Positions 50,490 through 63,425 of a DNA stretch of 64,000 nt are shown piece after piece; position 1 is the stretch's first letter, and each line of letters starts with the position of its first letter. Under the pieces are notes generated by a model. The model did no database searches. It was not told where the DNA came from and saw only the letters and a list, made by a program, of their open reading frames with translations. A program made the position numbers and the translations under genes. The stretch lies in the IMG/VR virus record IMGVR_UViG_3300012988_000016, positions 244,896 to 308,895 of that record, one strand, 5' to 3'.

Positions 50490-50508
50490 GCGGGTCCTCT
50501 ACACCACC

Positions 50509-51230: not shown

Positions 51231-51268
51231 TGCCCATGGCTTCGGATCGTCTGGTTGGAGGTGATGGC

Positions 51269-51511
51269 TCAAGATTCGGCCGAATCTACGGTGGTGCCAC
51301 CTTCTTCTTGAGTATATGGTTGAGCATGATCGGGGCAGAACAGTTTCCAATCGAATGCTTGTACCCAACCTTCGGGCAATTCATTGTAGCGTGGGGATAG
51401 GAATGGTTGTTGGAAGAACGGGAAGGTGGGAGCGAGTTCAAGTTTTAGTTGTTCGGTCCTTGGGCAGCCGGGGTGTTGGCACATGGCGGTAGCTAGGATG
51501 TAGAGTTGCAT
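51269..51511 (-). CDS. zinc-finger microprotein (tandem copy 3)
   Basis: CQHPGC...LPEGW...CPDH. Confidence 0.7.
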   Translation of the reverse strand: MQLYILATAMCQHPGCPRTEQLKLELAPTFPFFQQPFLSPRYNELPEGWVQAFDWKLFCPDHAQPYTQEEGGTTVDSAES

Positions 51512-52566: not shown

Positions 52567-52605
52567 TAGGCCCTTAACTCTTCAGAAGGACAGCCGTTTA
52601 TATCA

Positions 52606-52757
52606 ATGAAGCGGCTGGTTCGGTTCCCCCACGGGGCTAGCCCAGACGGAGAAGGGACGGCTTCGGGGAGATCCGGTCTGGGGACCTTTTGGAGGATGGA
52701 TTCCCCCGTCCCCGTGGGTCAGAAGGGCGGGCTTGCCGTGACGGCTGAGCGCCCTGT
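52606..52757 (-). ncRNA. candidate structured ncRNA between convergent class A motifs
   Basis: Minus motif 52764-52791 has no ATG at +1; four stems; G-U wobble favours the minus strand. Confidence 0.55.
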
Positions 52758-52952
52758 TGATGATAGAACGGCCATGGTGGGGAGAAGTTAAGGCTCACCA
52801 CAGCTTCGGTAATTTTCGAATCCCCCGGTCGATCGCCAACGCTAGGCAGATCACCACATTGTTGACCAGCTCTTCCATCCTAGCATCGAGGCGGGCCAGG
52901 ATCCCTTTGGGCTTTTGAGGCATCGGTCCTCAGCTTAGCCCAAAGGGGCCTA

Positions 52953-53189
52953 TCAAGCAATTGGTTTGGGTTTGGATGACCGCTTACGGTCTTGTCGCAA
53001 GATCTCTCGTTCGATGATTCTGGCCAGAAGGTTTCGTTCCGAACCATTGAGGTTGTGGCACGTACTGGCAGCCAGTACGGCGTATTCGGTCACTGTGATG
53101 GGGGTCGACTTGTTCATGGTAGGATGCTGGGGACAGGGGCTATTGAGTACCAGGATACTCAATAGCCCGCATTTGGGGCAACGATTCAT
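52953..53189 (-). CDS. hypothetical protein
   Basis: CPKC; coupled. Confidence 0.55.
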   Translation of the reverse strand: MNRCPKCGLLSILVLNSPCPQHPTMNKSTPITVTEYAVLAASTCHNLNGSERNLLARIIEREILRQDRKRSSKPKPIA

Positions 53190-53443
53190 GCGGTGATGTA
53201 AGCGTTGGCTGGCAGCCGGCGATCCAATAGTTGGCGGGCCAGGCTGTATTGAGTGCCCTCAGGGGTGAGGGTCCCAAGGCTGCCGTACTGATGGTCTTCA
53301 TTGCCATGTCGGGCTGTGAACTCGCCCGTGCGGCTACAACAGTAGAGGTCCTTGCCATCCAGGCGGCCGAGGAAGCGGCATTCATCGCAGTCGTGCTGGT
53401 ATAGGGGGCGGACCATTCGAGCAACCAACTTGGCGGTCTTCAT
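53186..53443 (-). CDS. conserved phage Cys/His protein
   Basis: HDCDECRFLG...DLYCC...ARHG; class A motif 53453-53480. Confidence 0.7.
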   Translation of the reverse strand: MKTAKLVARMVRPLYQHDCDECRFLGRLDGKDLYCCSRTGEFTARHGNEDHQYGSLGTLTPEGTQYSLARQLLDRRLPANAYITA

Positions 53444-53488
53444 GATGCATGATAGAACGGAAGTCGGTTTTGGAACTTAAGGGACAGG

Positions 53489-53680
53489 ATGACGGTTGAT
53501 CAGATCCTAGCAGGGTGGCGGAACGGGACGCTAAATAGGGCGGAGCTTATTAGCGGTTTGGCTCAGCTGGAGGTGCCCTTGGAAGAGCTCTACTTGCCGG
53601 AAGGCATGGCGGCCGATGTGGAGCGGTTGAGGGCCGCTATCGGGCGGGGAGAGGCCTTCACGGTAGAGGCCAAGGCTTAG
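53489..53680 (+). CDS. hypothetical protein
   Basis: 63-aa ORF filling the gap. Confidence 0.5.
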   Translation: MTVDQILAGWRNGTLNRAELISGLAQLEVPLEELYLPEGMAADVERLRAAIGRGEAFTVEAKA

Positions 53681-53871
53681 TCGTTATTGACGGTCAGCGC
53701 CGAATTGGTGACCCACACTGCTGTTCCGAAATGGGTCACCTTATCGTAATCCGACAGGTCTCGGCCCAACCCTTCCTTGAAGTACTCTTCGAGCATCTGA
53801 GGTTCCAGCTCAGGAGTGGTGACCAACACTTCAGTACCGTCAGAGTAGCTGATCAGGGTGAGGGTTGGCAT
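53677..53871 (-). CDS. hypothetical protein
   Basis: Class B motif 9 nt upstream. Confidence 0.65.
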   Translation of the reverse strand: MPTLTLISYSDGTEVLVTTPELEPQMLEEYFKEGLGRDLSDYDKVTHFGTAVWVTNSALTVNND

Positions 53872-53874
53872 CCC

Positions 53875-54315
53875 TCACTTTACACCGATGACGGTCCCAC
53901 ACCACATGAATTCCTGCATGTTGGGGACCTTTTTGGCCAAGGCTTGGATCAAGCTGACCACACGGCCGTAGGTCATTGCATCTTGTAGATGACGGACACC
54001 GACCGGCTGTTGCTTGATCGTGTAGTAGAGGTCATCGTAGAACACTACTTCGACGACCCTGGTTTGGCCGCTGTAGCACCATACTTGTGCGATCTGGCGG
54101 GGTTCTTGATCGGTTGGCCCGTGGACCCAATCATCCTGATTGAGGATCCCTTCAGCCGTCTCTTGGATCAGTTTGAGTGAGTAGCGTGTGGCTTTTAGCG
54201 GCTCTCTGCTGCCAGGGCAACCGAAACCATCAGCTCCGATGTGGTTGCAGATCTTACCCCCATAGATGTGTTGATCAGTCTTGCAGACGGGACAGGTGAC
54301 TAGGTGGCGTTCCAT
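53875..54315 (-). CDS. hypothetical protein with N-terminal zinc finger
   Basis: CPVC...H...CPGS; start MERHLV. Confidence 0.6.
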   Translation of the reverse strand: MERHLVTCPVCKTDQHIYGGKICNHIGADGFGCPGSREPLKATRYSLKLIQETAEGILNQDDWVHGPTDQEPRQIAQVWCYSGQTRVVEVVFYDDLYYTIKQQPVGVRHLQDAMTYGRVVSLIQALAKKVPNMQEFMWCGTVIGVK

Positions 54316-54317
54316 GT

Positions 54318-54614
54318 TCAGACTCCGTAGACCTTGCAATTGAGGTCTTTCCAGTCTTGACCCACCTGACCGTCCAGCCATTCGTTGTACTGCCGGCGGG
54401 CCACTTGGGCGCACTCCTGGTACAGCTCTGTGGTCATGCCGACGGGGTTGCTCAACAGGTGGATACGGGTCTCACCATCAATGAAGTCGGCCGCGTAGCG
54501 GAGCAGTTGGCGGCCCAGCATCACCTCAACCACACAAGGAGCTCCAGAGCCGTCTGGATAGGGCTTGCCTGAGTTGGTGGAGCATTTGAGGCTGTTAGGG
54601 GTGGGCTGGTTCAT
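54318..54614 (-). CDS. hypothetical protein
   Basis: Class A motif (54621-54648) at 34 nt. Confidence 0.7.
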   Translation of the reverse strand: MNQPTPNSLKCSTNSGKPYPDGSGAPCVVEVMLGRQLLRYAADFIDGETRIHLLSNPVGMTTELYQECAQVARRQYNEWLDGQVGQDWKDLNCKVYGV

Positions 54615-54661
54615 GTCTGATGGAACGGAAGCCAGGTGGGGAAGTTAAGGCTTCCCCACCC

Positions 54662-54895
54662 TCAGGGTTCGTTCTTGCCCAAACAAATCATCAAGCGAGT
54701 TCGGGTCTCGACGGAAGGTTCGGGAAAGGGTCTGGATTCCGATCGAGTGACGATCAGCTCTGGGCAGGCACCTTGCTGGTTACCCTGTACCGGCATTTGG
54801 GCCAACTGTCCGACCAGTAGGGCGATCAAGTCGGTCGCCTCTTGTCGGGTCAGGACCAGGACATCAAAGTTGGTTTGGGGGATTTGTCTGGCCAT
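54662..54895 (-). CDS. hypothetical protein
   Basis: Probable start MARQIP. Confidence 0.5.
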   Translation of the reverse strand: MARQIPQTNFDVLVLTRQEATDLIALLVGQLAQMPVQGNQQGACPELIVTRSESRPFPEPSVETRTRLMICLGKNEP

Positions 54896-55041
54896 GATCA
54901 GGCTTCTCGGGCGCTTCCTTTGGACCATCAGGGAGATCGATGAACCAATTCTTTTCGCAGAGGATTGAGCAGTAGCCGCCAATAGCATCAATGAGGCGGC
55001 CGCAGCCTTGGCAATTCGTTGGTGTGGAATACATGGTGTTC

Positions 55042-55320
55042 CTAGGTACTGTGGAGGAAATCGGTGCAGTCTCTGGCTGTTTGGAGGATTTTTTCTTTGA
55101 GAGCGGCCTCAGCCTTGGTCAACGTACCGGCGCAGAGGGTGAGGAAGGTCTTGTTGATCGTCACTGAGATCTGCCAGAAGTCTCCGCCGTCGGGTGGGGT
55201 CTGGTGTTGCACTTGGATGTGAGGCTTGCCCTGCTGTTCAGCGTTACTGTAGTGTTCCTTGTAGCCAGGCACAGCGTGTAGGGTTTGGCCTAAGACTTGA
55301 ATGGTGGAGGGGGTATCCAT
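55042..55320 (-). CDS. hypothetical protein, TIxxxGRxL family
   Basis: TIQVLGQTL...PHIQV. Confidence 0.65.
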   Translation of the reverse strand: MDTPSTIQVLGQTLHAVPGYKEHYSNAEQQGKPHIQVQHQTPPDGGDFWQISVTINKTFLTLCAGTLTKAEAALKEKILQTARDCTDFLHST

Positions 55321-55322
55321 GG

Positions 55323-55523
55323 TCAGATCTTGGTAGCCTGTTGGCGGCTCCAGTAGCAGACCCTACACCCACAGGGACGGCGAGCCATGAAGGCAGCTTT
55401 GAACTGTTCCTGTACGGCTGGAATGTCGACCACCAGCAGCTTGGCGACCCGCTTGGAGTGACGGGCTAGGATCTGGGCATTCATGCGGAGGGCTTCCGCC
55501 TCGTGAACCTGTAGGGTGATCAT
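55323..55523 (-). CDS. hypothetical protein
   Basis: Class A motif (55530-55557) at 34 nt. Confidence 0.7.
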   Translation of the reverse strand: MITLQVHEAEALRMNAQILARHSKRVAKLLVVDIPAVQEQFKAAFMARRPCGCRVCYWSRQQATKI

Positions 55524-55553
55524 GATTGATGGAACGGAACCTAGGACGGGAAG

Positions 55554-55793
55554 TTAAGCTCCAACCACGCAATAGAGCGTGCCTGGATTGAGGCGTTCGA
55601 GCTCTAGGCGACGAGCATTCGCCTCAGCGGTTTGCTCAGCCGTGAAGGCGTTTAGGCGGTATTCTGCTGAGGTGAATCGGGCTCGACTAACCGATCCATC
55701 CTTGTTGAGGCGTTTGACCAACAGGGTCTTGGTTGAGACCATATCGGTCCAATGTTTGGCCTGTAAGGCTCGGAAGGCGGCGGTGGGTTTCAT
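55554..55793 (-). CDS. hypothetical protein
   Basis: 79-aa ORF behind a structured leader. Confidence 0.65.
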   Translation of the reverse strand: MKPTAAFRALQAKHWTDMVSTKTLLVKRLNKDGSVSRARFTSAEYRLNAFTAEQTAEANARRLELERLNPGTLYCVVGA

Positions 55794-55813
55794 GAGCTTT
55801 GGTTGGAAAAGGG

Positions 55814-55875
55814 ACGCTGACCGTGCCGGCCCAGTCCCTAGGGCCTATCGGGCGTCGGACTCACCGGTCAGCGTT
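55814..55875 (-). ncRNA. structured leader or small RNA
   Basis: Class A motif 55882-55909 predicts +1 at 55875; 10-bp stem ACGCTGACCG/CGGTCAGCGT enclosing a GGCCC/GGGCC hairpin. Confidence 0.5.
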
Positions 55876-55985
55876 ACCTACTAGAACGGATGGGGGAGCG
55901 AGAAGTTAACCCTCTTGATACACCCCTATGTTGGGTTAACGATGGCCCTTGTTACTCAATCGGATAAGTAAACTGCGAGCAAAAA

Positions 55986-56011
55986 TGACCGAAAACGCCT
56001 ATTCTAGGACA
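55986..56011. promoter_or_regulatory. Xer-type-site-like imperfect palindrome
   Basis: TGACCGAAAA-cgccta-TTCTAGGACA (7/10 arms, 6-bp spacer), 43 nt upstream of the recombinase-like gene. Confidence 0.4.
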
Positions 56012-56054
56012 CAGTTTCGATGTATGTAGAATCTACTTGTAAGGCGAGCCATGT

Positions 56055-57059
56055 ATGCATCACGAGAAATTGCTCGAAGCGTGGTTGGCTGGATACGGGG
56101 GAGCCACCCTCATAGCGTACAGACCGGTCGCCCAATCGTTCCTAACTCAGGTCCCTCTTGAGATGCCGGCCATCCAGGCATGGGCCGAATCGCTCACAGG
56201 AAGTCCCTCAACAAGAGCGAGGAAGGTCTCGACCATTGTCAGCCTATTGACCTTCGCCCACAAGCACAGATACGTTGAAGAGAACTTGGGACTGTCTTTG
56301 AACCGTCCCAAGCAGACACCCAAGAAAGTCGTCCCTGTCGACACAAGCCTGATCCAGGATCTGGTTGGCGCTGCCAACGGGGAGCGGGACCGCCTCTTGA
56401 TTCGAGTGCTCTATGAGACCGGCAAATCCCCAGAGGCCGTCACCAAGCTTCGGTTCAAGGACTTGGATCAGGTCTCTGACGGATTGAAAGCTAGCCTGCT
56501 TGAGTTCCAAAAGGACGCCAGCCCTGAGCGGCTTGTGTTCCTATCATTTCGAAACCAAAAGCTTTCTGCCAGAGATGCCAGACGTATGGTACAGCGTGCT
56601 GCAACGGAAGCCGGCTTGGATGAGTTGGGGACGGCCTGGCTTCGCAAGGCCCATCACTGGAAAGACCCGAAACCAGTCCGAGCTTGGAATATTCGACAGG
56701 CTGCCTCGGGGCCGTTCGGAATCATCTACGGTCTGAGGGACCCAAGAACCAACGATCTCTGCTACGTCGGTATGACCCGTCTAAAGCTCCAAGAGCGGCT
56801 GAGGTGTCATCTGTCGAAGGCCAACCTAAAGACCCGTAATCGGGCTTCTGGATGGCTTCGGGGCCTCCTTGCAGACGGGGTTCGCCCTGTGGCTGAAGTG
56901 TTGGCAGTCGCCAAGGATCGGGACGAGCTGCTCTACCTGGAACGCTATCACATCAGCCAAGCCCGCTCGGAGGGACATCCGCTGGTCAACAGTACGCACG
57001 TCTGGAGCCTGAGGAAGATTCAAAAGAGGCTCAGAGGCGACATGAGTCGCTGGGCTTGA
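56055..57059 (+). CDS. degenerate tyrosine recombinase fused to a GIY-YIG-like endonuclease domain
   Basis: Core-binding domain; RDRLLIRVLYETGKS; WLRKAH; then IIYGLRDP...YVGMT...R...H...E. Confidence 0.75.
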   Translation: MHHEKLLEAWLAGYGGATLIAYRPVAQSFLTQVPLEMPAIQAWAESLTGSPSTRARKVSTIVSLLTFAHKHRYVEENLGLSLNRPKQTPKKVVPVDTSLIQDLVGAANGERDRLLIRVLYETGKSPEAVTKLRFKDLDQVSDGLKASLLEFQKDASPERLVFLSFRNQKLSARDARRMVQRAATEAGLDELGTAWLRKAHHWKDPKPVRAWNIRQAASGPFGIIYGLRDPRTNDLCYVGMTRLKLQERLRCHLSKANLKTRNRASGWLRGLLADGVRPVAEVLAVAKDRDELLYLERYHISQARSEGHPLVNSTHVWSLRKIQKRLRGDMSRWA

Positions 57060-57307
57060 CTGGTGGTACCTATCGGCCAGCCGACCAAGACGTTACTTGG
57101 TGTAAGGCCTGCATGGTGAAAATCTTTCTAAGGGTGTTGGGCGAAGACCATTACGCCGAACACATGGTCTCCCGAGTTCCCGGTCTTAACGAGCTGGTGG
57201 CTAGGGATGACGGTTCCTATCTGGTCAAAACCGTCTGTCATCACGTAGACCCTGTGGAGGGTGAAGTGGTGGCGACGGTCCTAATTGAGAGGCCCCAGCG
57301 AACATGA
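57056..57307 (+). CDS. hypothetical protein
   Basis: Coupled ORF. Confidence 0.5.
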   Translation: MTGGTYRPADQDVTWCKACMVKIFLRVLGEDHYAEHMVSRVPGLNELVARDDGSYLVKTVCHHVDPVEGEVVATVLIERPQRT

Positions 57308-57507
57308 CCGTAGGCGAACTCAAGCTCTTCCTCGCCAACTCTGAACTCCCCGATTCGGCAGAGGTGGTGATCCCTGGCCGACACTCCCTCCACGTCTGTC
57401 AGGCGGCTGAGACCACCATCGGGGACATCAACCACTACGGGCAGACCAGCTGGAAGCCCAACGGTGGCGACCCCGCACTGATCCTTCAGGATTGTTCCAC
57501 GGGTTGA
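57304..57507 (+). CDS. small phage protein (MTVxEL type)
   Basis: MTVGELKLFL...LPDSAEVV. Confidence 0.65.
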   Translation: MTVGELKLFLANSELPDSAEVVIPGRHSLHVCQAAETTIGDINHYGQTSWKPNGGDPALILQDCSTG

Positions 57508-57509
57508 GC

Positions 57510-57755
57510 ATGAACTTCTTCGATGAAGCACAGCAAGAAGTAGCGGAAGCCGAGGAACGCCGCTCCAAAGAACGTACGAGGCAGGACATGACCAAGCAAG
57601 AACTGATCAAGCTCTTGAAGGAGCAGCTCAGGATCGAGGTACGGTCGGAGGATCGAAACAACTACCTCAGCGGGCGATGTCAGCGGGTCAGGGTCATGCT
57701 CTTCTTGGGGGATGAGCTGATAGCCGAAGATTCGGCCGATTTGGGGACGGGCTGA
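57510..57755 (+). CDS. hypothetical protein
   Basis: Start MNFFDE. Confidence 0.6.
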   Translation: MNFFDEAQQEVAEAEERRSKERTRQDMTKQELIKLLKEQLRIEVRSEDRNNYLSGRCQRVRVMLFLGDELIAEDSADLGTG

Positions 57756-57757
57756 CG

Positions 57758-58024
57758 ATGAACCGTGAAACCAGAGAAGAGGTGATTCGCCTGTTGTCCG
57801 AGATGACAGGGGAATCGGACTCGATCCAGATTCAGACGATGCGGATCCCCGCCTGTATGGTGCGACCAGGCGATCGGTGGCCCTGCTATCAGAAGCCCAC
57901 ACTTGTCGTAAAGACGGTGCTTAATTCAAACGAAACGATGAGGTTCACGTTCGAGGACGGCCGCACAAGCACCACCTGGGCTAGCGGGACATCGATTGAG
58001 GTGGTGCGGCTGACGGCTATCTAG
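57758..58024 (+). CDS. small beta-barrel protein
   Basis: Similar to 15867-16064. Confidence 0.6.
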   Translation: MNRETREEVIRLLSEMTGESDSIQIQTMRIPACMVRPGDRWPCYQKPTLVVKTVLNSNETMRFTFEDGRTSTTWASGTSIEVVRLTAI

Positions 58025-58097
58025 CTGCTTTCACAGCTCGTTTTGACCCGAACGAGCTGTAGGGCTGGTGTAAGTGAGGGGATGAAAGGAGGTTCTC

Positions 58098-58313
58098 ATG
58101 CAAGAAGGAGACCTCGTTACGTTGAAGACAGCGGACAGCCCCATCATGGTAATCGAAAGTTTCCAGACGGGTGAACGTATTGCAAAGTGTGTATGGTGGA
58201 ATCCTTGGAGTAAGGAGATCCGTCATGAACAAATATACATTGGGGGTCTAAAGGAGTATGTACCTCCAAAACCAGACAATGGTAGGACCCTAAAAGTTGG
58301 AGTAAAGCGTTAA
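58098..58313 (+). CDS. YodC/DUF2158-like protein
   Basis: GDLVTLK...PIMVI...CVWW; AAGGAGG RBS. Confidence 0.75.
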   Translation: MQEGDLVTLKTADSPIMVIESFQTGERIAKCVWWNPWSKEIRHEQIYIGGLKEYVPPKPDNGRTLKVGVKR

Positions 58314-58337
58314 CTCCCGCCCACCCCGGCCGTACTA
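58310..58337 (+). promoter_or_regulatory. class A motif driving the tRNA-like pair
   Basis: TTAACTC-N12-GCCGTACTA; no ATG at +1. Confidence 0.7.
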
Positions 58338-58373
58338 TCAATCAAGGGCAACGGAGTCATGACCCACAGCCCC

Positions 58374-58465
58374 CAGTCGAATAGTTGGCCGGTTGCCAGC
58401 ATCTGATCCAATAACTCAGAATCGGGCGAGACGTCGCCCCAGGGGTTCAACTCCCCCTCGACGGT
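58374..58465 (+). tRNA. atypical tRNA-like gene (8/4 fold, long variable arm, 9-nt anticodon loop; identity undetermined)
   Basis: D-stem GTTGGC/GCCAGC, anticodon stem TCTGA/TCAGA, V-arm GGGCGA/TCGCCC, T-arm GGGG-TTCAACT-CCCC, acceptor 6/8 paired. Confidence 0.6.
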
Positions 58466-58538
58466 TTGCGGCTAGTTCAACAGGAAGAGCGACCCTTGTT
58501 AAAAGGGAGAGAAGTGGGTTCGAGGCCCACGCCGTGAG
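58466..58538 (+). tRNA. atypical tRNA-like gene (anticodon loop GTTAA, Asn-like)
   Basis: Acceptor TTGCGGC/GCCGTGA, TA, D GTTC/GAGC, CCCTT-GTTAA-AAGGG, T GTGGG-TTCGAGG-CCCAC. Confidence 0.7.
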
Positions 58539-58541
58539 CAA

Positions 58542-58745
58542 ATGGCACAACTGACCGAAGAACGGCGAGCCTACTACGAGAAAGCGATCCTCGACTACGA
58601 ACAGTTCCTGGCCCGTCCCCATCCAGAGCACTTCTACAGCAAACCGATCAAGTTCCCCGCCAACTTCGACCCTAAGCGGACCAACCATACCCACATCCTC
58701 GCCCTGATCCAAGACGCCAAAGAACAGCTTGAACCAAATGGCTAA
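58542..58745 (+). CDS. hypothetical protein
   Basis: 67-aa ORF right after the tRNA-like pair. Confidence 0.55.
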   Translation: MAQLTEERRAYYEKAILDYEQFLARPHPEHFYSKPIKFPANFDPKRTNHTHILALIQDAKEQLEPNG

Positions 58746-58950
58746 GTGCCGCTTCTGCCATGCCCCATCTGGCCAGCCTCACGATCGGACCATCCCACAC
58801 GGCGATCCATTCAACCGGAACTTCGTTGGCGATGTGGCCCAATGCGGTTGCAGGTGGGAGCGACAACCAGGCTATGGAGACGTGCTGATCTTATGCCCGA
58901 TCCACAGTGAGATCAATCGAATTGAGTATCTCAATACTCAATCTAGCTAG
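58738..58950 (+). CDS. small Cys/His protein
   Basis: CRFC...CGC...CPIH. Confidence 0.55.
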   Translation: MAKCRFCHAPSGQPHDRTIPHGDPFNRNFVGDVAQCGCRWERQPGYGDVLILCPIHSEINRIEYLNTQSS

Positions 58951-58970
58951 TTTGGTGTAAGATTTGGATC

Positions 58971-59345
58971 ATGAAACGTAGCCCCGCCATCCTCCACATA
59001 GCTCAAGATCTACAGTGGACCCCTGAGGATGTCCTCACGCCCATCGAATCCGCCTACCAACGCCTCAAACTGGCGGGCCTCCACGTTCACCTATGTGACG
59101 ATCGACTGATCGGAGGCTCTCACTACGATGACTCGGATCATCGTATCCGTATGGTGCTGAACGGCTTCATGATCGCTCCCGAGGGAACGGGCTATCGGCT
59201 CAAGAGGGCATCCGACGGTCAGACGGACGGCATAGGGTGCCTGACGCTCGATCAAGCCATCAGGTTGGTGATCGATACGATCCAGCCTCAGCCGAATATT
59301 GAGGCCCCACCCAGACCCCCTCAAAAAGGCCCACAGCTCTATTAA
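58971..59345 (+). CDS. hypothetical protein
   Basis: Class B motif 11 nt upstream. Confidence 0.6.
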   Translation: MKRSPAILHIAQDLQWTPEDVLTPIESAYQRLKLAGLHVHLCDDRLIGGSHYDDSDHRIRMVLNGFMIAPEGTGYRLKRASDGQTDGIGCLTLDQAIRLVIDTIQPQPNIEAPPRPPQKGPQLY

Positions 59346-59369
59346 CTTTCCCCCACCTGATCCGTTATA
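59342..59369 (+). promoter_or_regulatory. class A motif driving a tRNA-like gene
   Basis: TTAACTT-N12-TCCGTTATA; no ATG at +1; CCTAGCTG/CAGCTAGG hairpin follows. Confidence 0.7.
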
Positions 59370-59437
59370 TAGATCAGAATGCATGGAGCGCCTAGCTGGC
59401 CCAAGAGGCAGCTAGGACCGAGTCAAGTCTTGGCAGC

Positions 59438-59509
59438 GATACTTTGGTGTACTGGTGCACACACCCGATAAGGGTGGAGAGTTGGGTTCGAATCCCAGCA
59501 AGTATCCCA
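59438..59509 (+). tRNA. atypical tRNA-like gene (anticodon loop GATAA, Ile-like)
   Basis: Acceptor GATACTT/AAGTATC then CCA; D GTGT/GCAC; CACCC-GATAA-GGGTG; T GTTGGG-TTCGAAT-CCCAGC. Confidence 0.75.
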
Positions 59510-59510
59510 C

Positions 59511-59714
59511 ATGAAAGAACAACTAGCCGACATCCGAGATGCCTGGCTGCTACTCATCATGATAGTGTGGTGGGTGGTGACGCTGGAGTTCCAACGCTGG
59601 GAGATTCGACGTCAGTACGCTGGTCTGACCAGGCAGCTTGAGCAGAGTCAACTGAGGCTTCAACAACTCAAGCGAGGGGTCGGGACAGTAGCGGTACGTT
59701 ACCGTGTAGGCTGA
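59511..59714 (+). CDS. small membrane protein
   Basis: TM segment plus coiled coil. Confidence 0.55.
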   Translation: MKEQLADIRDAWLLLIMIVWWVVTLEFQRWEIRRQYAGLTRQLEQSQLRLQQLKRGVGTVAVRYRVG

Positions 59715-59937
59715 ACAACTATCGGCGGCCGACTGGCCTGGCTCCCCATAGCGAAGCTACGGGCCGGCCCACCAGCCGCCGCTAAATGACCGTCTGGCCG
59801 AACCGATCGATAATCCGTTCGGGCTGTACAGATCTCCCAAAATGGCGTATCCAGTATGCGCCCCGCTCAAAACGGCAAATAGGTCAAATCCCCCTATCTA
59901 TCCAAATTTTTATCGACCGGCCATTTTTGGCTCGATC

Positions 59938-59975
59938 AAAAAATCCGCATGGCTTCGCCGGGCGGCGGATTTTTT
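59938..59975. terminator. bidirectional terminator-like hairpin
   Basis: AAAAAATCCGC...GCGGATTTTTT. Confidence 0.55.
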
Positions 59976-59992
59976 CTGGGCCCGCATTTTCC

Positions 59993-60157
59993 ATGAAACC
60001 TGATCCCAAACAGCTGATTGCTAAGGTTGAGGCCGATCTAGAGAGGGAACGGATGCGGTTCGCCCTATTGACCAAACAGCATCTGGCCAAGGTAGCGAGG
60101 CTGAAGAAGCGGATGGTTCGACTGCAAGAGCAATCTGGTCAAGAGTGGTGGCGTTGA
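59993..60157 (+). CDS. small coiled-coil protein
   Basis: Probable start MKPDPK. Confidence 0.5.
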   Translation: MKPDPKQLIAKVEADLERERMRFALLTKQHLAKVARLKKRMVRLQEQSGQEWWR

Positions 60158-60169
60158 CGCTCGATACTG

Positions 60170-60554
60170 TCAGCCAAATGCTGGGTCGAGCCGTCGCAAC
60201 AGTCCCAACATCCAGTCGATGAAGGACTGTTGCGATAGCCCTTTGAGGGCGATCCGTTCCCCGAATCTGGTACATTCGAGCCATCGGTTATCGTCAGAGA
60301 GGGTCAGGTTCAGCTGCAGGTCTCCCTCGGGGATGGGGATCGGCACATACGTTAGCTCGATCGCTCGTGGGTAGCTGCCTAGGATTTGGAGCCGCACTCC
60401 TTTGGCTGATAGGACCTAACGACTCAGCGATCTGCAGGACGGCCGGCCCCACTAGGTCGAACAGCATTCCTTCTGCCTGTGCTTGTTGATCGGAGCGAGC
60501 CTTCAGATACGCTTCACGCCCTTGGAGGAATTGGGCAACGGCTTTAAGGGACAT
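60170..60554 (-). pseudogene. possibly frameshifted gene (ORFs 60294-60554 and 60170-60397)
   Basis: Start at the palindromic class B site; a one-base shift near 60415 would join ...LQIAES to VLSAKGVRLQILG... Confidence 0.4.
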
Positions 60555-60593
60555 ACGGCCAATACACCAATTCTGGTGTATTGGCCGTATGTC
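60550..60593. promoter_or_regulatory. perfect 20-bp inverted repeat holding two divergent class B motifs and both start codons
   Basis: GACATACGGCCAATACACCA-attc-TGGTGTATTGGCCGTATGTC. Confidence 0.85.
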
Positions 60594-60810
60594 TACCAAA
60601 TACCTGTTGAGCCTCATACTGCTGCTTCAGGCATGTGGTGGCCGTGTTGACGGTGGGCCCGACCAGCCTTTCCAAACCCCTGGACCTACATCTATCTGTC
60701 GCGAAGGTGAGTTGCCCATCACATTGGAGCGTCTGACGCCTCAGCTCCGTGAAGAGTTGGAGGGGTGTAGGATGTTGGACCCGACCAAGTGGTGTTGTCC
60801 AACGGTGTAG
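60589..60810 (+). CDS. small Cys-rich lipoprotein
   Basis: LQAC lipobox followed by GG; ends WCCP. Confidence 0.7.
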   Translation: MSTKYLLSLILLLQACGGRVDGGPDQPFQTPGPTSICREGELPITLERLTPQLREELEGCRMLDPTKWCCPTV

Positions 60811-60818
60811 ACCCATCC

Positions 60819-61142
60819 ATGAAACCCACCACTACAGTTGCGATCGGTCTAGCCACCCTACTGGATGCGTTCCATTGTCTCGACACACGGGTGGAGGCGG
60901 TCTGGATCCATCCTGCCCACATGCCAGAGCTCAGAACTGACCCTGAGTACGACCCGATCGCCCAGATGTCGGTCATCCAACAAGTCAGTCAAGCTGGTGG
61001 AGGCAGGTTTGAAGGCTTGCTGTGGGGAGTCCGGATCCTAAGTTCCGAGTTGGTGCCTATGGGGCGAGCCTGTGTCTTGCTGGCAGGCTTTGAGGCCAGG
61101 TTGGTGTCGGGTGAGGGGTCGGTGCCTTTCATGATCCAATGA
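60819..61142 (+). CDS. stand-alone protein resembling a major-capsid-protein subdomain
   Basis: DAF...RVEAVWIHP...LR...GLLWGVRILSSELVPMGRACV; class B motif. Confidence 0.5.
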   Translation: MKPTTTVAIGLATLLDAFHCLDTRVEAVWIHPAHMPELRTDPEYDPIAQMSVIQQVSQAGGGRFEGLLWGVRILSSELVPMGRACVLLAGFEARLVSGEGSVPFMIQ

Positions 61143-61476
61143 ACTGGCGTAGCCTGATAGCTGCCAGTCGTCTTGACATCCAGGGTTCATTCACGAAACT
61201 GTATCGGCCGTCCATCAGTGTTATGGAGGCGATCATTTTAGATGTCCCATTGGGGTTCAGTTGCAGGATCTCAAACACGAACTGCCCATGCCAGCTACGG
61301 CTCGTTAGTAGACATCTCACGTTACGTAGTCCCGCCAGCTTGACCAAGCCGTCAATTTGCTGGATGGCTGTTGCCAACCATTCGTCTAGGAAACGTTCTT
61401 GGAATTGCTCGAACGTAAGCTCCCCAGAACGTATCTGATCATAGACCCTCCTAGCGTTCTTCGACTTGCGGGGCAT
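61129..61476 (-). CDS. hypothetical protein
   Basis: AAGGA RBS; 115 aa. Confidence 0.55.
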   Translation of the reverse strand: MPRKSKNARRVYDQIRSGELTFEQFQERFLDEWLATAIQQIDGLVKLAGLRNVRCLLTSRSWHGQFVFEILQLNPNGTSKMIASITLMDGRYSFVNEPWMSRRLAAIRLRQFIGS

Positions 61477-61960
61477 GGGGGTCCTTTACGCTGCTGAGGG
61501 GGCGTTCCCTGCAATACTGTTGCAACGCCCGTCTAGCTAGCTCATATGCCTGGAGGGCTGGGACCAGCCTAGGTTGCTTCACCCGACAGTAAGGCAGGTA
61601 GCTGTTTAGCTGCATGTCTCCAAATCGATCGGCCCAACTCAACACAGCTCCTTCGCTGCAATGGTTCCAAAGTTTGGTCTGTTCGACCAAACCTAGTCGT
61701 TTGAGCTGTTGGGCCAACGCCACGGTGGTCAGCTGGACCCTACAGACTACCTGCCTGGCTGGGGGTTCCAATGTGGCGAAGCGCTCCATGTAATCGACCA
61801 TGTTTTGGTGATTATCGAGCAGGTACTGCATGCTGGAGAGGAACTCAGGTTCGCCTAGTGGCGGGGTCCTGGGGTCTTTCGAGCCAGCCCAGGTGGGTAA
61901 GGCAATCGAGAGTACCGACAAACAGGTGAGGGCTTGGAGCATGGAGCGGCGGTTCATCAT
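61451..61960 (-). CDS. exported protein with Tat-like signal
   Basis: MNRRSML...AWA-type signal; class B motif. Confidence 0.6.
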   Translation of the reverse strand: MMNRRSMLQALTCLSVLSIALPTWAGSKDPRTPPLGEPEFLSSMQYLLDNHQNMVDYMERFATLEPPARQVVCRVQLTTVALAQQLKRLGLVEQTKLWNHCSEGAVLSWADRFGDMQLNSYLPYCRVKQPRLVPALQAYELARRALQQYCRERPLSSVKDPHAPQVEER

Positions 61961-62010
61961 TTGGGCTTTACACCGGTTATCTTTTATCCGGAAGGGCCGT
62001 TGGTGTCTAT

Positions 62011-62307
62011 ATGTCGATGAATCCCACCATCCAAATTTTCGGCCGAACCCTCGACCTGATCCGCCTGGAGTCTAAGTACGATGACCAGATCCAGTTGGGG
62101 GTCTACCGGACCCCTGCCGGTCAGTACCCTAGGATTGAGGTTAATTGGTTCACCCATGTGGGTCAACCTGACTATTTGAATCTTTCGGTCCGACTAGCCA
62201 AGGATCTTGGAGTGGGATCGTATGGGGAATCGATCAAAGAGTTGGAGCAACGGCTCAAGAAAGAATTCAGTCTCTACCGAACCATCGAAGCCGAGTTGTT
62301 GGGCTGA
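62011..62307 (+). CDS. hypothetical protein, TIxxxGRxL family
   Basis: TIQIFGRTL; class A variant at 34 nt. Confidence 0.65.
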   Translation: MSMNPTIQIFGRTLDLIRLESKYDDQIQLGVYRTPAGQYPRIEVNWFTHVGQPDYLNLSVRLAKDLGVGSYGESIKELEQRLKKEFSLYRTIEAELLG

Positions 62308-62309
62308 CC

Positions 62310-62337
62310 TTAACTTCTCCACCTGGCATCCGTTCTA
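62310..62337 (+). promoter_or_regulatory. class A promoter-like motif
   Basis: TTAACTT-N12-TCCGTTCTA-N6-ATG(62344). Confidence 0.8.
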
Positions 62338-62343
62338 CCAGGT

Positions 62344-62484
62344 ATGAAACAAACAATCTCGCTACTGGGTGATGTGCTCGCTCTCTCGTGTTTGGTGGCT
62401 GCTGTCCCTTTCATGTTGGGCATGAAGGCTTACCGGAAACTGACTGGTAAGAAGCCCGCTCGCCCGATCAACATTTTCTTCTGA
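62344..62484 (+). CDS. 46-aa membrane peptide (not in ORF track)
   Basis: MKQTISLLGDVLALSCLVAAVPFMLGMKAYRK... Confidence 0.65.
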   Translation: MKQTISLLGDVLALSCLVAAVPFMLGMKAYRKLTGKKPARPINIFF

Positions 62485-62495
62485 AGGAGATCCAG

Positions 62496-62696
62496 ATGCG
62501 AAACCATTTCCGAAGTTCTCGTCTGACCTTGGTCGAAATCCTAATCGGCCTCGCCATCTGTTTGACCGTAGCTGGTGCGATCTATAGCCTGACCTACATG
62601 GCCGTCAATGACTGTCATGACGGGCTATGGGTCCGTGACGCGATGGGGATGCCTCGTTGTATTCATACTCAAAACGTCAACCTACTGGTCCACTGA
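62496..62696 (+). CDS. prepilin-like mini protein
   Basis: AAGGAG RBS; basic leader then LTLVEILIGLAI; two C-terminal Cys. Confidence 0.6.
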   Translation: MRNHFRSSRLTLVEILIGLAICLTVAGAIYSLTYMAVNDCHDGLWVRDAMGMPRCIHTQNVNLLVH

Positions 62697-62986
62697 TGAC
62701 TCAACATACCTTGCGTGTCCATACCCGAAATGGGATCAAGACCTACACGGTCGACGGGGATAATACGGTAGATGCCATCTTTTTAGGTGAGCGACTCGCC
62801 ACCAGCGGGCCTGGTATCATGGTGGTGTGGTACAGAGATGGTGTGGCGTATCATCGTTGGATTGGGCAATCAGTTGGGGTGTGTTGGGTTGAAGTCAACG
62901 TGGGGCCGCAAGAACCCAACCGAGCTGAATCCTGGACTTTTTCTGGAGAGGTTAGGCCTTCTAAGCTTCCGTCTGACCCCACATGA
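62696..62986 (+). CDS. hypothetical protein
   Basis: Coupled start MTQHTL. Confidence 0.55.
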   Translation: MTQHTLRVHTRNGIKTYTVDGDNTVDAIFLGERLATSGPGIMVVWYRDGVAYHRWIGQSVGVCWVEVNVGPQEPNRAESWTFSGEVRPSKLPSDPT

Positions 62987-63315
62987 CCAAAATGGACCAG
63001 TTCATCAAAATACCTCATCCAACCAATCGGGTCTGGCCTGGCACTCCGTATCATGTATTGATGACGGTTGAGCAGGCCTATGAGGATGGCCGTCAGACGG
63101 GCCTCAACTGGGCGGCAGCTGACCAATACGTCCCTGGCGGACCGTCGGTCGGACCAGGGCAACACATCGGATTCTCGGCGTTGGAGGACCAGGAGCGGCG
63201 GGTCCACCGTGAATGGATGCGGGGTTGGCATGCTGGCTTTCGGCAGCAATACCCCAAGGCGGCCTTACGGCCGCAATGGTACCGAAGATTCGATTTTGAT
63301 CTATCCGACGTCTGA
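62983..63315 (+). CDS. hypothetical protein
   Basis: AYEDG...G...W.RGW..G. Confidence 0.6.
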   Translation: MTKMDQFIKIPHPTNRVWPGTPYHVLMTVEQAYEDGRQTGLNWAAADQYVPGGPSVGPGQHIGFSALEDQERRVHREWMRGWHAGFRQQYPKAALRPQWYRRFDFDLSDV

Positions 63316-63332
63316 TCGGTGTATAGACCCTA

Positions 63333-63412
63333 GTCAGCCGTTTTGGATGGTCCAGAGCTGCTGATCCAAACCCCTCCTAGAGACCGTGCGGCTCATACTA
63401 GGAGGGGTTTGG
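63333..63412 (+). ncRNA. candidate two-hairpin small RNA
   Basis: Orphan GGTGTA at 63318; hairpin GTCAGC...GCTGAT then a perfect 15-bp inverted repeat 63366-63380/63398-63412. Confidence 0.4.
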
Positions 63413-63425
63413 TGTATGTTGGCTG

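What the first reader, a model, noticed from the sequence alone, without database searches (positions are those of the whole stretch)
52574..63412. Promoters without an ATG predict a cluster of non-coding RNAs
Seen: all four class A copies lacking a start codon at +1 (52791-, 55909-, 58310+, 59342+) and one orphan class B copy (63318+) are followed by stable stem-loops or cloverleaves. In several cases the first stem begins within 1-3 nt of the predicted +1. This cross-validates both the promoter model and the RNAs. All lie within about 12 kb to the right of the skew switch. Inference: leaderless mRNAs plus non-canonical tRNA-like and small RNAs may form one translation-takeover or anti-defence programme. 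Leaderless mRNAs do not need the anti-SD.
Basis: partly seen in the sequence, partly recalled or inferred. Interest (0 to 1): 0.75.

Follow-up and report, generated by a model that had tools for sequence, protein, structure and literature searches.

The report
Phage promoters driving odd tRNA-like genes

Summary
The window is the right end of a 308,895-bp virus contig; 97-99% identical relatives reach 475,623 bp. The class A motif (TTAACTT-N13-CCGTTCTA-N6-ATG) is real: 29 copies against 0 in a shuffle, 25 of them with ATG at the predicted start.

- **58310+** is followed after 29 nt by two abutting cloverleaves (58374-58465, 58466-58538).
- **59342+** is followed by two hairpins and a third cloverleaf (59438-59509).
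- All three keep a tRNA T-loop and D-loop GG but are irregular. Their anticodon loops fold as 9, 7 (with G33) and 5 or 7 nt. Their acceptor features (long variable arm with U73; G3·U70; G-1:C73) disagree with their anticodons.
- Each locus is followed within 1-3 nt by the ATG of a 67-codon ORF with no promoter or SD of its own.
- **55909-** and **52791-** start with 5'-terminal hairpins. The first looks like a structured leader of ORF 55793-55554. The second is one of two convergent promoters across a GC-rich spacer with no convincing ORF.
- The class B "orphan" at 63318 cannot be told from 71 other ATG-less YGGTGTA sites; its hairpins are real.

No transcript data and no divergent homologues were obtainable, so expression, processing and covariation are untested.

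The parts
58310..58343 (+). Class A promoter without ATG: TTAACTC 58310-58316, CCGTACTA 58330-58337, predicted +1 = A58344. Its TTAAC holds the TAA stop of ORF 58098-58313.
   Evidence: PWM 31.1 bits; sequence
58374..58465 (+). tRNA-like gene #1. It has a 7-bp acceptor stem with an A2·G71 mismatch and a 6-bp D stem. The anticodon stem is 5 bp plus a U·C pair, with loop CCAAUAA (9 nt if the U·C is open). The variable arm is long (6 bp plus a tetraloop). The T stem has 4 G-C pairs with loop UUCAACU. The discriminator is U73 and no CCA is encoded. Its 3' end abuts #2.
   Evidence: MFE is a cloverleaf, z -3.07. ARAGORN calls it only at a relaxed threshold, as Ile(AAT). Rfam tRNA-Sec model 26.5 bits, below the cut-off of 47 and not specific.
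58466..58538 (+). tRNA gene #2, class I shape. The acceptor stem is U1-A72, U2·G71, G3·U70 (58468/58535). The anticodon loop is UGUUAAA, giving anticodon UUA with G33. ARAGORN's default register reads UAA (Leu), but there is no long arm. The discriminator is G73 and no CCA is encoded.
   Evidence: Rfam RF00005 29.3 bits against a cut-off of 29; ARAGORN Leu(TAA), or Stop(TTA) at a relaxed setting; MFE is a cloverleaf, z -2.71
58542..58745 (+). ORF of 67 codons. Its ATG lies 3 nt after the discriminator of #2, with no class A or B promoter and no SD upstream. ORF 58738-58950 (70 aa, Cys/His-rich) follows and overlaps it by 8 nt.
   Evidence: Coding score 0.32 per codon; sequence
59342..59375 (+). 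Class A promoter without a usable ATG: TTAACTT 59342-59348, CCGTTATA 59362-59369, predicted +1 = A59376. Its TTAAC holds the TAA stop of ORF 58971-59345.
   Evidence: PWM 32.1 bits
59391..59433 (+). Two leader hairpins (59391-59416 and 59418-59433) between +1 and tRNA-like #3.
   Evidence: Folds (z -2.8 for the first)
59438..59509 (+). tRNA-like gene #3. G-1 (59438) pairs with C73 (59506). The acceptor stem is A1-U72 to U6-A67 plus a U7·C66 mismatch. CCA is encoded at 59507-59509 in this strain and reads CTA in relatives. The anticodon arm is CACCC/GGGUG with a 5-nt loop GAUAA in the MFE fold. Alternative registers give CGAUAAG (anticodon AUA) or CCGAUAA (anticodon GAU). The T loop is UUCGAAU.
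   Evidence: ARAGORN Tyr(ATA), or Ile(GAT) at a relaxed setting; RF00005 19.2 bits, below the cut-off; MFE is a cloverleaf, z -2.67
59511..59714 (+). ORF of 67 codons with a hydrophobic segment. Its ATG lies 1 nt after the encoded CCA of #3, with no promoter or SD of its own.
   Evidence: The spacer before the ATG varies between strains (CAC to TAG) while the ATG and the tRNA body do not.
59940..59978 (+). Canonical intrinsic terminator that ends the rightward unit holding both tRNA loci.
   Evidence: sequence
55876..55909 (-). Class A promoter without ATG: TTAACTT 55909-55903, CCGTTCTA 55889-55882, predicted +1 = A55875.
   Evidence: PWM 38.0 bits
55794..55875 (-). Leader of 82 nt. A 62-nt irregular hairpin starts at +2 (55814-55875). 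It is followed by CCCUUUUCC and about 20 nt without an SD, up to the ATG of ORF 55793-55554 (79 aa).
   Evidence: Hairpin z -2.63; whole leader z -1.5; ORF coding score 0.22 per codon
52758..52791 (-). Class A promoter without ATG, predicted +1 = A52757. No ATG occurs on this strand for more than 215 nt.
   Evidence: PWM 38.1 bits; sequence
52574..52757 (.). GC-rich (66-68%) spacer bracketed by convergent class A promoters, 52574+ and 52791-. On the minus strand a 5' hairpin lies at 52724-52755. The plus-strand ORF 52606-52791 (61 aa) has almost no coding signal.
   Evidence: 5' hairpin z -2.75; the rest z -0.2 to -0.8; ORF score 0.06 per codon; 52574+ PWM 20.6 bits
63318..63412 (+). A YGGTGTA site without ATG (63317-63323), then hairpins at 63333-63365 and 63366-63412. 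The 3' arm of the second hairpin overlaps the next class B promoter (63410-63420), which serves the ATG at 63426.
   Evidence: Hairpin z -4.71 and -6.85. The promoter status of 63318 is not supported.

Best explanation
The element is a set of phage transcription units in which the usual rule, that the promoter +1 is the A of the ATG, is broken because the first product is an RNA.

Shown: a fixed-geometry promoter, TTAAC(T/C)T-N13-CCGT(T/A)CTA-N6-A(+1). Its AAC...N16...CGT layout resembles promoters of ECF-type sigma factors. That resemblance is my own reading and the factor is not identified.

Shown: at 58310+ this promoter is followed by a 29-nt leader and two abutting tRNA-shaped genes. At 59342+ it is followed by a 62-nt hairpin leader and one tRNA-shaped gene. 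All three keep the D-loop GG and T-loop UUCRANY needed for the tRNA elbow. They are nonetheless irregular, and their acceptor-end identity marks disagree with their anticodons:
- #1 has a long variable arm and U73, with an AAU-type loop.
- #2 has G3·U70, the AlaRS mark, with UUA.
- #3 has G-1:C73, the HisRS mark, with GAU or AUA.

Inferred: the primary transcripts are cut by RNase P at each tRNA 5' end. For #1 this cut also makes its 3' end. The 3' ends are trimmed and CCA is added; the phage has its own CCA-adding-type enzyme. The same cuts leave the downstream 67-codon ORFs with only 1-3 nt before their AUG. Those ORFs have no promoter or SD of their own, so the cuts would bring them into the phage's leaderless translation regime. 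This is tRNA punctuation.

What the released RNAs do is open. I think it most likely that they are processed, probably chargeable tRNA-like RNAs of the allo-tRNA or irregular-tRNA kind, not ordinary decoders.

55909- gives a leader with a 5'-terminal stabilising or attenuating hairpin for ORF 55793-55554. 52791- and 52574+ give overlapping convergent transcripts over a spacer with no convincing ORF. The 63318 site is probably not a promoter, and its hairpins probably end or insulate the upstream unit.
For: - **Promoter reality and geometry:**. The same promoter with leaderless ATGs occurs in related giant-phage contigs G001, G002 and L048.
- **Less folding where translation starts at +1:** ATG-bearing copies have unstructured starts and ATG-less ones structured starts (exact rank p about 1.7e-4).
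- **Location of the tRNA-shaped elements:** ARAGORN finds two tRNA genes in the 309 kb at default settings, and Rfam adds the third element abutting one of them. These make two loci, each directly after an ATG-less class A promoter.
- **Cloverleaf folds and tRNA marks:**
- **Not assembly errors:** the loci are identical in six other assemblies from other samples.
- **ORF adjacency:** an ATG-ORF lies within 1-3 nt of the tRNA 3' end at both loci. Among 43 canonical tRNAs of the related phage G001, only one spurious case does so. That gives about p 0.003 by my count.
- **Spacer variation:** the spacer before the ATG varies between strains while the tRNA body and the ATG do not.
- **SD use elsewhere:** other internal genes of this phage do carry AGGAG-type SDs, for example ahead of the ATGs at 58098 and 62497. 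Their absence here therefore calls for an explanation.
- **Phage-encoded CCA-adding-type nucleotidyltransferase:** G000:141345-141809.
- **Published parallels:** irregular tRNAs with Ala (G3:U70) or His (G-1) identity and unrelated anticodons, including UUA, and polycistrons of such tRNAs in soil data (PMC5389517).
Against: - No transcript, 5'-end or processing data exist. No RNA run was listed.
- No covariation is available. All available relatives are identical in these RNAs, and no divergent homologue of the loci was found.
- The relatives' variation is mosaic, so the invariance of the RNAs is weak evidence of constraint.
- Rfam scores are marginal or below the cut-off: 29.3, 19.2, and none for #1 with the tRNA model.
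- G33, the 5-nt and 9-nt loop options and the stem mismatches are what decaying pseudogenes would also show.
- The sigma factor or RNA polymerase that reads class A is unidentified.
- An encoded CCA in #3 would block RNase Z in this strain, so the exact 3' cut is uncertain.
- The 55909- and 52791- RNAs have only modest structural support.
Confidence: 0.6

Rival explanations
1. The three RNAs are working adaptor tRNAs that the phage uses to reprogramme decoding. #2 would insert Ala at UAA stops as an ochre suppressor. #3 (His identity) and #1 (class II identity) would misread Ile codons. The result would poison or remodel host translation early in infection.
For: - G3·U70, G-1:C73 and a long variable arm are dominant identity marks that act whatever the anticodon is. 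This rests on established knowledge and on PMC5389517.
- In that study, natural allo-tRNAs with such mismatches, once given an amber anticodon, read amber codons in E. coli. Missense allo-tRNAs stopped growth or killed the cells.
- The related phage G001 carries a high-scoring amber-suppressor tRNA(CUA) and a paralogue with an 8-nt loop.
- The phage encodes a CCA-adding-type enzyme.
Against: - G33 in #2, C32-C33 in #1 and #3, and loops that fold as 5 or 9 nt are poor for ribosomal decoding.
- The phage itself ends genes with TAA: 19 of 106 leaderless genes and 55 of 353 long ORFs. TAA is built into its own promoter -35 element.
- There is no excess of coding extensions behind TAA.
- Ile codons are common in phage genes (ATC 35 per 1000), so misreading would hurt the phage too.
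- In PMC5389517 the G-1 irregular tRNAs were charged but not used in translation.
Confidence: 0.15
2. The RNAs are decoys or nuclease-resistant stand-ins aimed at host defences that cut tRNA anticodon loops. They would keep the tRNA body that such enzymes bind but carry altered loops.
For: - Phage tRNAs with changed anticodon loops, and phage tRNAs that neutralise tRNA-cutting defences, are described (PMC10264068, PMC11555353).
- tRNA-like genes with the same CCC-GAUAA-GGG arm recur in unrelated viral and metagenomic contigs (L056, L073, L118, L092/L172/L173, L100/L182, L174/L203). tRNA-Ile(GAU) genes with C33 recur in other giant-phage arrays (L063, L071, L084, L168, L171).
- The loci sit among small orphan genes that each have their own promoter, as early counter-defence regions do.
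Against: - The recurrence was found with a pattern that forced the loop sequence, so it is not an unbiased count.
- No defence system or host is known.
- No neighbouring gene has an anti-defence annotation.
- Nothing links the particular loops to a known nuclease.
Confidence: 0.15
3. The cloverleaves are decaying tRNA pseudogenes with no function of their own. The ATG-less promoters simply serve the downstream ORFs through leaders that happen to contain tRNA relics. 55909- and 52791- are ordinary leadered or antisense transcripts.
For: - Rfam scores are low, with stem mismatches (A2·G71, A·C, A27·A43, U7·C66) and odd loops.
- The related phage has 42 high-scoring tRNAs in a separate array, so decoding needs are probably met elsewhere.
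- No conservation beyond 97-99% identical strains could be shown.
Against: - The elbow-forming D-loop GG and the T-loop are intact in all three, and the folds are cloverleaves by energy alone.
- The downstream ORFs lack an SD and would be buried behind a stable structure unless the RNA is cut.
- The identity marks G3·U70 and G-1:C73(+CCA) are unlikely leftovers of random decay.
Confidence: 0.1

Closest known systems
Allo-tRNAs and irregular polycistronic tRNAs of soil bacteria, probably Acidobacteria (Mukai et al. 2017, Nucleic Acids Res; PMC5389517)
   Same: - They come from soil.
- They are tRNA-shaped RNAs whose identity marks (long variable arm, G3:U70, G-1) do not match their anticodons, which include UUA (reading UAA), Ile and Leu types.
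- They have a long D stem and a long anticodon stem.
- Two or three irregular tRNAs occur in one transcript.
- Some are charged but not used in translation, and a regulatory role has been proposed.
   Different: - The defining 8/4 or 9/3 acceptor/T split is not seen here: #1 reads as 7 plus 4-5 with mismatches, and #3 as 7/5 plus G-1.
- These genes lie in a roughly 475-kb phage genome, behind a phage promoter, and are fused to leaderless-type ORFs.
- There is no toxin-antitoxin neighbourhood.
- No sequence comparison was possible because the paper's supplements are not held.
Phage T4 tRNA cluster, with dimeric precursors cut by RNase P and stable tRNA-like species 1 and 2 RNAs (own knowledge)
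   Same: Abutting phage tRNA genes made as one precursor. The RNase P cut at the downstream tRNA makes the 3' end of the upstream one. tRNA-like RNAs of unknown role lie beside true tRNAs.
   Different: T4 tRNAs are canonical decoders transcribed by the host polymerase from ordinary promoters. They are not followed at 1-3 nt by ORFs.
Mitochondrial tRNA punctuation giving leaderless mRNAs (own knowledge; leaderless mitochondrial mRNAs in PMC9881170)
   Same: A tRNA directly abuts the start codon of the next ORF, so excising the tRNA would create an mRNA with almost no leader in a system that translates leaderless mRNAs.
   Different: It is a bacterial virus. Only two such junctions are seen, and most genes get their leaderless 5' end from a promoter. 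Processing is not shown.
Phage tRNAs with altered anticodon loops that escape tRNA-cutting defences (PMC10264068; PMC11555353)
   Same: Phage-encoded tRNAs whose anticodon loops depart from the host-type consensus.
   Different: Those are otherwise canonical, decoding tRNAs with substitutions. Here loop length, position 33 and identity are all aberrant, and no defence link is shown.
ECF-type sigma factor promoters (AAC in the -35 element, CGT in the -10 element, about 16-nt gap; own knowledge)
   Same: Class A has AAC and CGT 16 nt apart and starts about 6 nt after the -10-like block.
   Different: No sigma region 2 was found in the phage contigs. The only region-4-like protein, in relative G001, has two r4 repeats and no r2. 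Recognition is untested.

Membership tests
Canonical bacterial/phage tRNA (Rfam RF00005) | Score at or above the Rfam gathering cut-off (29 bits) | tested here: inconclusive
   #2 scores 29.3 bits, just over the cut-off. #3 scores 19.2, below it. #1 is not reported with this model. True tRNAs of relative G001 score 30-75 bits.
Canonical bacterial/phage tRNA (Rfam RF00005) | 7-nt anticodon loop with U33 and a purine at position 37 | tested here: not met
   #2 has UGUUAAA, so G33. #1 has CCAAUAA closed by U·C, so C33, or a 9-nt loop. #3 has a 5-nt GAUAA loop in the MFE fold, or CGAUAAG (G33), or CCGAUAA (C33).
Canonical bacterial/phage tRNA (Rfam RF00005) | Elbow elements: GG in the D loop and T-loop UUCRANY on a G-C-rich T stem | tested here: met
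   All three have them: D loops CGGUU, AACAGGAA and CUGG; T loops UUCAACU, UUCGAGG and UUCGAAU.
Canonical bacterial/phage tRNA (Rfam RF00005) | Agreement of identity elements with the anticodon | tested here: not met
   #2 has G3·U70 with UUA or UAA and no long arm, which rules out a bacterial tRNA-Leu shape. #3 has G-1:C73 with GAU or AUA. #1 has a long arm and U73 with AAU (sequence). Rules from established knowledge and PMC5389517.
Allo-tRNA (Mukai 2017) | 12-bp acceptor branch split 8/4 or 9/3 | tested here: not met
   #1 has a 7-bp acceptor stem (with A2·G71) plus 4 G-C T pairs and an A·C pair. An 8-bp reading needs two mismatches and leaves no discriminator.
Allo-tRNA (Mukai 2017) | Long variable arm, long D stem with a small loop, and a lengthened anticodon stem | tested here: met
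   #1 only: variable arm of 6 bp plus a tetraloop, D stem of 6 bp with a 5-nt loop, anticodon stem of 5 bp plus a U·C layer.
tRNA-Sec (Rfam RF01852) | Gathering score of 47 bits, UCA anticodon, 8/5 branch | tested here: not met
   #1 scores 26.5 bits and #3 scores 24.4 bits. There is no UCA anticodon. The model gives similar or higher scores to ordinary tRNAs of G001.
tRNA-punctuated leaderless mRNA | The ORF start abuts the tRNA 3' end and has no promoter or SD of its own | tested here: met
   ATG 58542 lies 3 nt after G73 of #2. ATG 59511 lies 1 nt after the CCA of #3. There is no class A or B motif and no AGGAG upstream. This is not seen after canonical tRNAs of G001.
tRNA-punctuated leaderless mRNA | Endonucleolytic release shown by processed 5' and 3' ends | not testable with these tools
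   No RNA run was listed; only DNA contigs could be laid.
ECF-sigma-type promoter | AAC (-35) and CGT (-10) about 16 nt apart | tested here: met
   PWM consensus cTTAACTTc-N12-TCCGTTCTA.
ECF-sigma-type promoter | A cognate sigma factor with regions 2 and 4 | tested here: not met
   No Sigma70_r2, r4 or r4_2 was found in G000, but the contig is only 65% complete. G001 has a 218-aa protein with r4-type repeats and no r2.
Class B leaderless promoter (this phage clade) | YGGTGTAnnG with ATG 8-11 nt downstream | tested here: not met
   The 63318 site has the motif but no ATG or GTG/TTG at 8-11 nt. 71 such ATG-less sites exist in the contig.
Intrinsic terminator | G-C-rich hairpin followed by a U run | tested here: inconclusive
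   The 63366-63412 hairpin (15 bp) is followed by UGUAUGUU, and the 55814-55875 hairpin by CCCUUUUCC. Neither passes the scan, which finds only the 59954 site.

The most novel reading that the evidence does not exclude
A giant soil phage carries hybrid-identity tRNAs: an Ala-type adaptor aimed at UAA, a His-type adaptor aimed at Ile codons and a class II adaptor aimed at Ile codons. They are expressed from phage-specific promoters. In this reading they are real, charged molecules that the phage uses to disturb or redirect host decoding, or to disarm tRNA-directed immunity. Their excision would also act as tRNA punctuation that creates leaderless phage mRNAs. That would be a bacterial-virus counterpart of the mitochondrial scheme.
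Probability: 0.15. Interest if true: 0.85.

Novelty: new variant of a known kind. Interest (0 to 1): 0.55.

Why it matters
If the processing model holds, this phage clade would show a second route to leaderless mRNAs besides starting transcription at the ATG, namely cutting a tRNA off the front of the message. That route is so far known mainly from mitochondria.

If the RNAs are charged, they would place the puzzling irregular tRNAs seen in soil metatranscriptomes inside a virus. They would also give them a testable role, either in mistranslation or in defence evasion.

The work also defines two promoter classes that together mark about 106 leaderless genes in 309 kb. Class B recurs in other giant-phage contigs. 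These motifs give a practical way to call gene starts and non-coding transcripts in this uncultivated group.

Tried and rejected
- **Known RNA families.** An Rfam scan of the window at gathering score, and of 52-64 kb at E up to 10, gave only the three tRNA-type hits. Nothing was found for the 52791-, 55909- or 63318 regions.
- **tRNA-Sec reading of #1 and #3.** Rejected, because the model scores ordinary tRNAs equally well.
- **Alternative genetic code.** Rejected. The standard code already gives 95% ORF coverage, all three stops end long ORFs, and there is no extension signal after TAA.
- **Covariation.** Six close relatives and four DNA runs show no change inside the RNAs.
- **Search for divergent homologues.** Neighbouring proteins gave either nothing or unrelated gene contexts without tRNAs. 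Loop-plus-T-loop DNA patterns gave only chance hits for #1. For #3 they gave unrelated tRNA-likes or variable arms.
- **Paralogues.** There are none of any candidate RNA in the contig.
- **RNA-seq.** No run was listed.
- **Phage RNA polymerase or sigma factor.** None was found.
- **Neighbour functions.** No Pfam or PHROG function was found for the neighbouring ORFs apart from the integrase/GIY-YIG fusion.
- **Short ORF at 59379 and ORF 52606-52791.** Both were tested as coding explanations for the ATG-less promoters. Their coding scores are -7.0 and +3.7, so neither is convincing.
- **GC-skew switch as a replication origin.** There is a local minimum near 51 kb, but it is not the contig-wide extreme. 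An origin-priming transcript for 52791- was considered but has no support.

Full report
**What the window is.** The window is the last 64 kb of a 308,895-bp linear virus contig from soil, estimated 65% complete. Relatives 97-99% identical in DNA occur in six other assemblies. One of them is a 475,623-bp contig. This is therefore an uncultivated giant phage. The standard code fits. ORFs of at least 100 codons cover 95% of the contig, and TGA, TAG and TAA all end long ORFs.

**The promoter classes.** Class A is a 28-bp block with a fixed start: TTAAC(T/C)T, 13 nt, CCGT(T/A)CTA, then 6 nt and ATG. Strict matches number 11 in the window against 0.05 expected. A PWM built from 16 seed copies finds 29 sites in the contig and none in a shuffle. 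Of these, 25 have ATG at the predicted start.
- The stop codon TAA of the preceding gene is often part of the TTAAC element.
- The same promoter with leaderless ATGs occurs in the related giant-phage contigs G001 and G002 and in a distant 1.5-kb relative.
- The AAC...16 nt...CGT layout recalls ECF-sigma promoters. That is my own reading. No sigma region 2 and no phage RNA polymerase was found in these partial genomes.

Class B is YGGTGTAnnG with ATG 8-11 nt downstream. It has 84 copies here and many more in other large phage contigs. Together the two classes mark 106 leaderless genes of at least 40 codons in the contig.

**Check of the observation.** The four strong class A copies without ATG are exactly the ones named, and each has A at the predicted +1. 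I folded the first 60 nt after +1 for every copy.
- The 25 ATG-bearing copies average -9.7 kcal/mol. That is less folded than random genome windows (-13.6), as leaderless starts should be.
- The four ATG-less copies give -22.6, -27.3, -17.1 and -22.0.
- They hold ranks 1, 2, 3 and 6 of 29, an exact probability of 4/23751.

The link between a missing ATG and a structured RNA is therefore real. The details are uneven. The first stem starts at +2 (55909-) and +3 (52791-), a weak one starts at +3 (58310+), and the first stem comes only at +16 for 59342+. The last copy also has an ATG at +4, which opens only 30 poor codons.

**The two tRNA loci.** At default settings ARAGORN finds only two tRNA genes in the whole 309 kb, and both lie here. 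Rfam adds a third tRNA-type element that abuts the first. All three fold into cloverleaves by energy alone, with z from -2.7 to -3.1.

Behind 58310+ there is a 29-nt leader and then two genes.
- **#1 (58374-58465)** has a long variable arm, a 6-bp D stem, and an anticodon stem of 5 bp plus a U·C layer around CCAAUAA. Its discriminator is U73.
- **#2 (58466-58538)** starts at the very next base. It is a class I cloverleaf whose acceptor stem holds G3·U70. Its best-paired anticodon loop is UGUUAAA, which gives anticodon UUA with G33. ARAGORN's default Leu(UAA) call needs a weaker stem, and the RNA lacks the long arm of bacterial tRNA-Leu.

Behind 59342+ come two hairpins and then the third gene.
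- **#3 (59438-59509)** has G59438 pairing with C59506. That is a G-1:C73 pair on top of a 7-bp acceptor stem.
- It is followed by an encoded CCA, which reads CTA in the relatives.
- Its anticodon arm CACCC/GGGUG is the arm seen in a tRNA-Ile-like gene (L169), and in E. coli tRNA-Ile as I recall it.
- The loop, however, is GAUAA (5 nt) in the best fold, or CGAUAAG or CCGAUAA in other registers.

All three keep the D-loop GG and a standard T loop, so an L-shaped fold is plausible. Their Rfam tRNA scores are 29.3, 19.2 and none. True tRNAs in the related phage score 30-75. The tRNA-Sec hits are not specific.

**Junctions with the next genes.** The ATG of a 67-codon ORF follows #2 after 3 nt. Another follows #3 after 1 nt. 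Neither ORF has a class A or B motif or an SD, although other internal genes of this phage do have AGGAG-type SDs. In the related phage's array of 42 canonical tRNAs plus two separate ones, no real ORF starts this close.

Between strains the short spacer before the second ATG changes from CAC to TAG, while the tRNA body and the ATG stay fixed. The rightward unit ends at a canonical terminator at 59940-59978. The phage encodes a CCA-adding-type nucleotidyltransferase elsewhere.

From these facts I infer that precursor cutting by RNase P and 3' enzymes has two effects. It releases the small RNAs, and it leaves the ORFs with almost no leader. Nothing here shows this directly.

**The other sites.**
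- **55909-** gives an 82-nt leader. A 62-nt hairpin starts at +2 (z -2.6). It is followed by CCCUUUUCC and 20 nt without an SD before ORF 55793-55554. It is most simply a structured leader, possibly an attenuator.
- **52791-** faces a weaker class A copy at 52574+ across a 215-bp segment of 66-68% G+C. The minus strand has no ATG at all there, and the plus-strand 61-codon ORF has almost no coding signal. Only the 5' hairpin stands out (z -2.75); the rest folds like shuffles. Overlapping convergent transcripts are the plain reading, and their role is unknown.
- **63318** has the class B core, but so do 71 other sites without an ATG. The two strong hairpins behind it (z -4.7 and -6.9) lie between two operons, and the second overlaps the next promoter. 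I read them as a terminator or insulator. This is unproven.

**Comparison with what is known.** The closest match is the set of allo-tRNAs and irregular polycistronic tRNAs found in soil data and attributed to Acidobacteria (PMC5389517).
- These RNAs carry Ser, Ala (G3:U70) or His (G-1) identity with unrelated anticodons, including UUA.
- Some are toxic missense adaptors in E. coli, and some are charged but unused.
- The defining 8/4 or 9/3 acceptor branch is not met here, so I do not file these genes as allo-tRNAs.
- The T4 dimeric tRNA precursors and the mitochondrial punctuation scheme are working analogies taken from my own knowledge.
- Phage tRNAs with changed anticodon loops that escape tRNA-cutting defences are a further lead (PMC10264068, PMC11555353).
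- Pattern scans showed tRNA-likes with the same CCC-GAUAA-GGG arm in unrelated viral and metagenomic contigs, and C33 tRNA-Ile genes in other giant-phage arrays. The pattern forced that loop, so this is a lead and not a frequency.

**What could not be done.** No RNA run holds this sequence. All relatives are identical in the RNAs, and their variation is mosaic, so neither covariation nor constraint can be measured. Searches for divergent homologues through five neighbouring proteins and three DNA patterns gave no syntenic locus. G002 is collinear with G000 at 60-70% protein identity. G001, which holds the tRNA array, matches nothing in G000. A canonical tRNA set therefore probably lies in the missing third of this genome. 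That is an inference.

**Verdict.** The small-RNA status of the other three sites and the idea of a single programme are not. I rate this a new variant of a known kind, with interest 0.55.

Noticed in passing
window 56009-57757 (ORF 56055-57059 and neighbours): A 334-aa ORF that combines an integrase-like region with a GIY-YIG nuclease domain, plus three small ORFs, is replaced by a different short segment in relatives L045-L047 and in DNA run X4. This is an insertion/replacement polymorphism right beside the divergent promoter region. Several assemblies also break here.
   Followed up: partly
L042:14148-14400 and L042:15376-15795 (just beyond the window's right end, in the 97% identical relative): Two more class-A-like promoters without a usable ATG are followed by about 220 nt and about 385 nt of non-coding sequence. 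The second is A-rich with many GAAA-type loops. Fold z scores are -2.75 and -1.77, and there is no Rfam hit. Five further class A promoters with ATG follow.
   Followed up: partly
window 60536-60611: A perfect palindrome holds two back-to-back class B promoters, each with an ATG 8 nt downstream on its own strand (60589+ and 60554-).
   Followed up: no
L028:1501-1594 and L028:1744-1818 (G001:131463-131780): The related giant phage carries a high-scoring class II amber-suppressor tRNA(CUA). About 150 nt further on is a paralogue whose anticodon loop has 8 nt (UUCUUAAA). Both are on the strand opposite to its 42-tRNA array with tmRNA.
   Followed up: partly
G000:C1:141345-141809 (outside the window): The phage encodes a PolyA_pol/CCA-adding-type nucleotidyltransferase (65.7 bits, 399-aa frame). 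Relative G002 has the homologue.
   Followed up: no
window 58311-58313, 59343-59345, 55554-55556, 63825-63827: The TAA stop of the upstream gene is embedded in the TTAAC element of the next class A promoter, so genes and promoters are packed without spacers.
   Followed up: no
L063, L071, L084, L168, L169, L171 (other viral and metagenome contigs): tRNA-Ile(GAU) genes with C instead of the near-universal U at position 33 (loop CCGAUAA or UCGAUAA) recur in tRNA arrays of other large phages.
   Followed up: no
L217, L218, L219, L155: Class B leaderless promoters (YGGTGTA, ATG 8-11 nt on) are dense in other large phage contigs of 51-63% G+C, with up to 10 in 10 kb. They are therefore a feature of the clade or of its host, not of this phage alone.
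   Followed up: partly
window 21346-28686: A 2446-aa ORF with collagen triple-helix repeats (Pfam E 2e-13). It is probably a structural or fibre protein.
   Followed up: no
window about 50500-51500: The cumulative GC skew has a local minimum near 51 kb. This is 5 kb left of the point where transcription diverges (55.9 kb), so the skew switch is not explained by gene direction alone. It is not the extreme of the contig.
   Followed up: partly
window 59446-59452: A YGGTGTA class B core lies inside the D arm of tRNA-like #3. It is probably chance, since no ATG follows.
   Followed up: no
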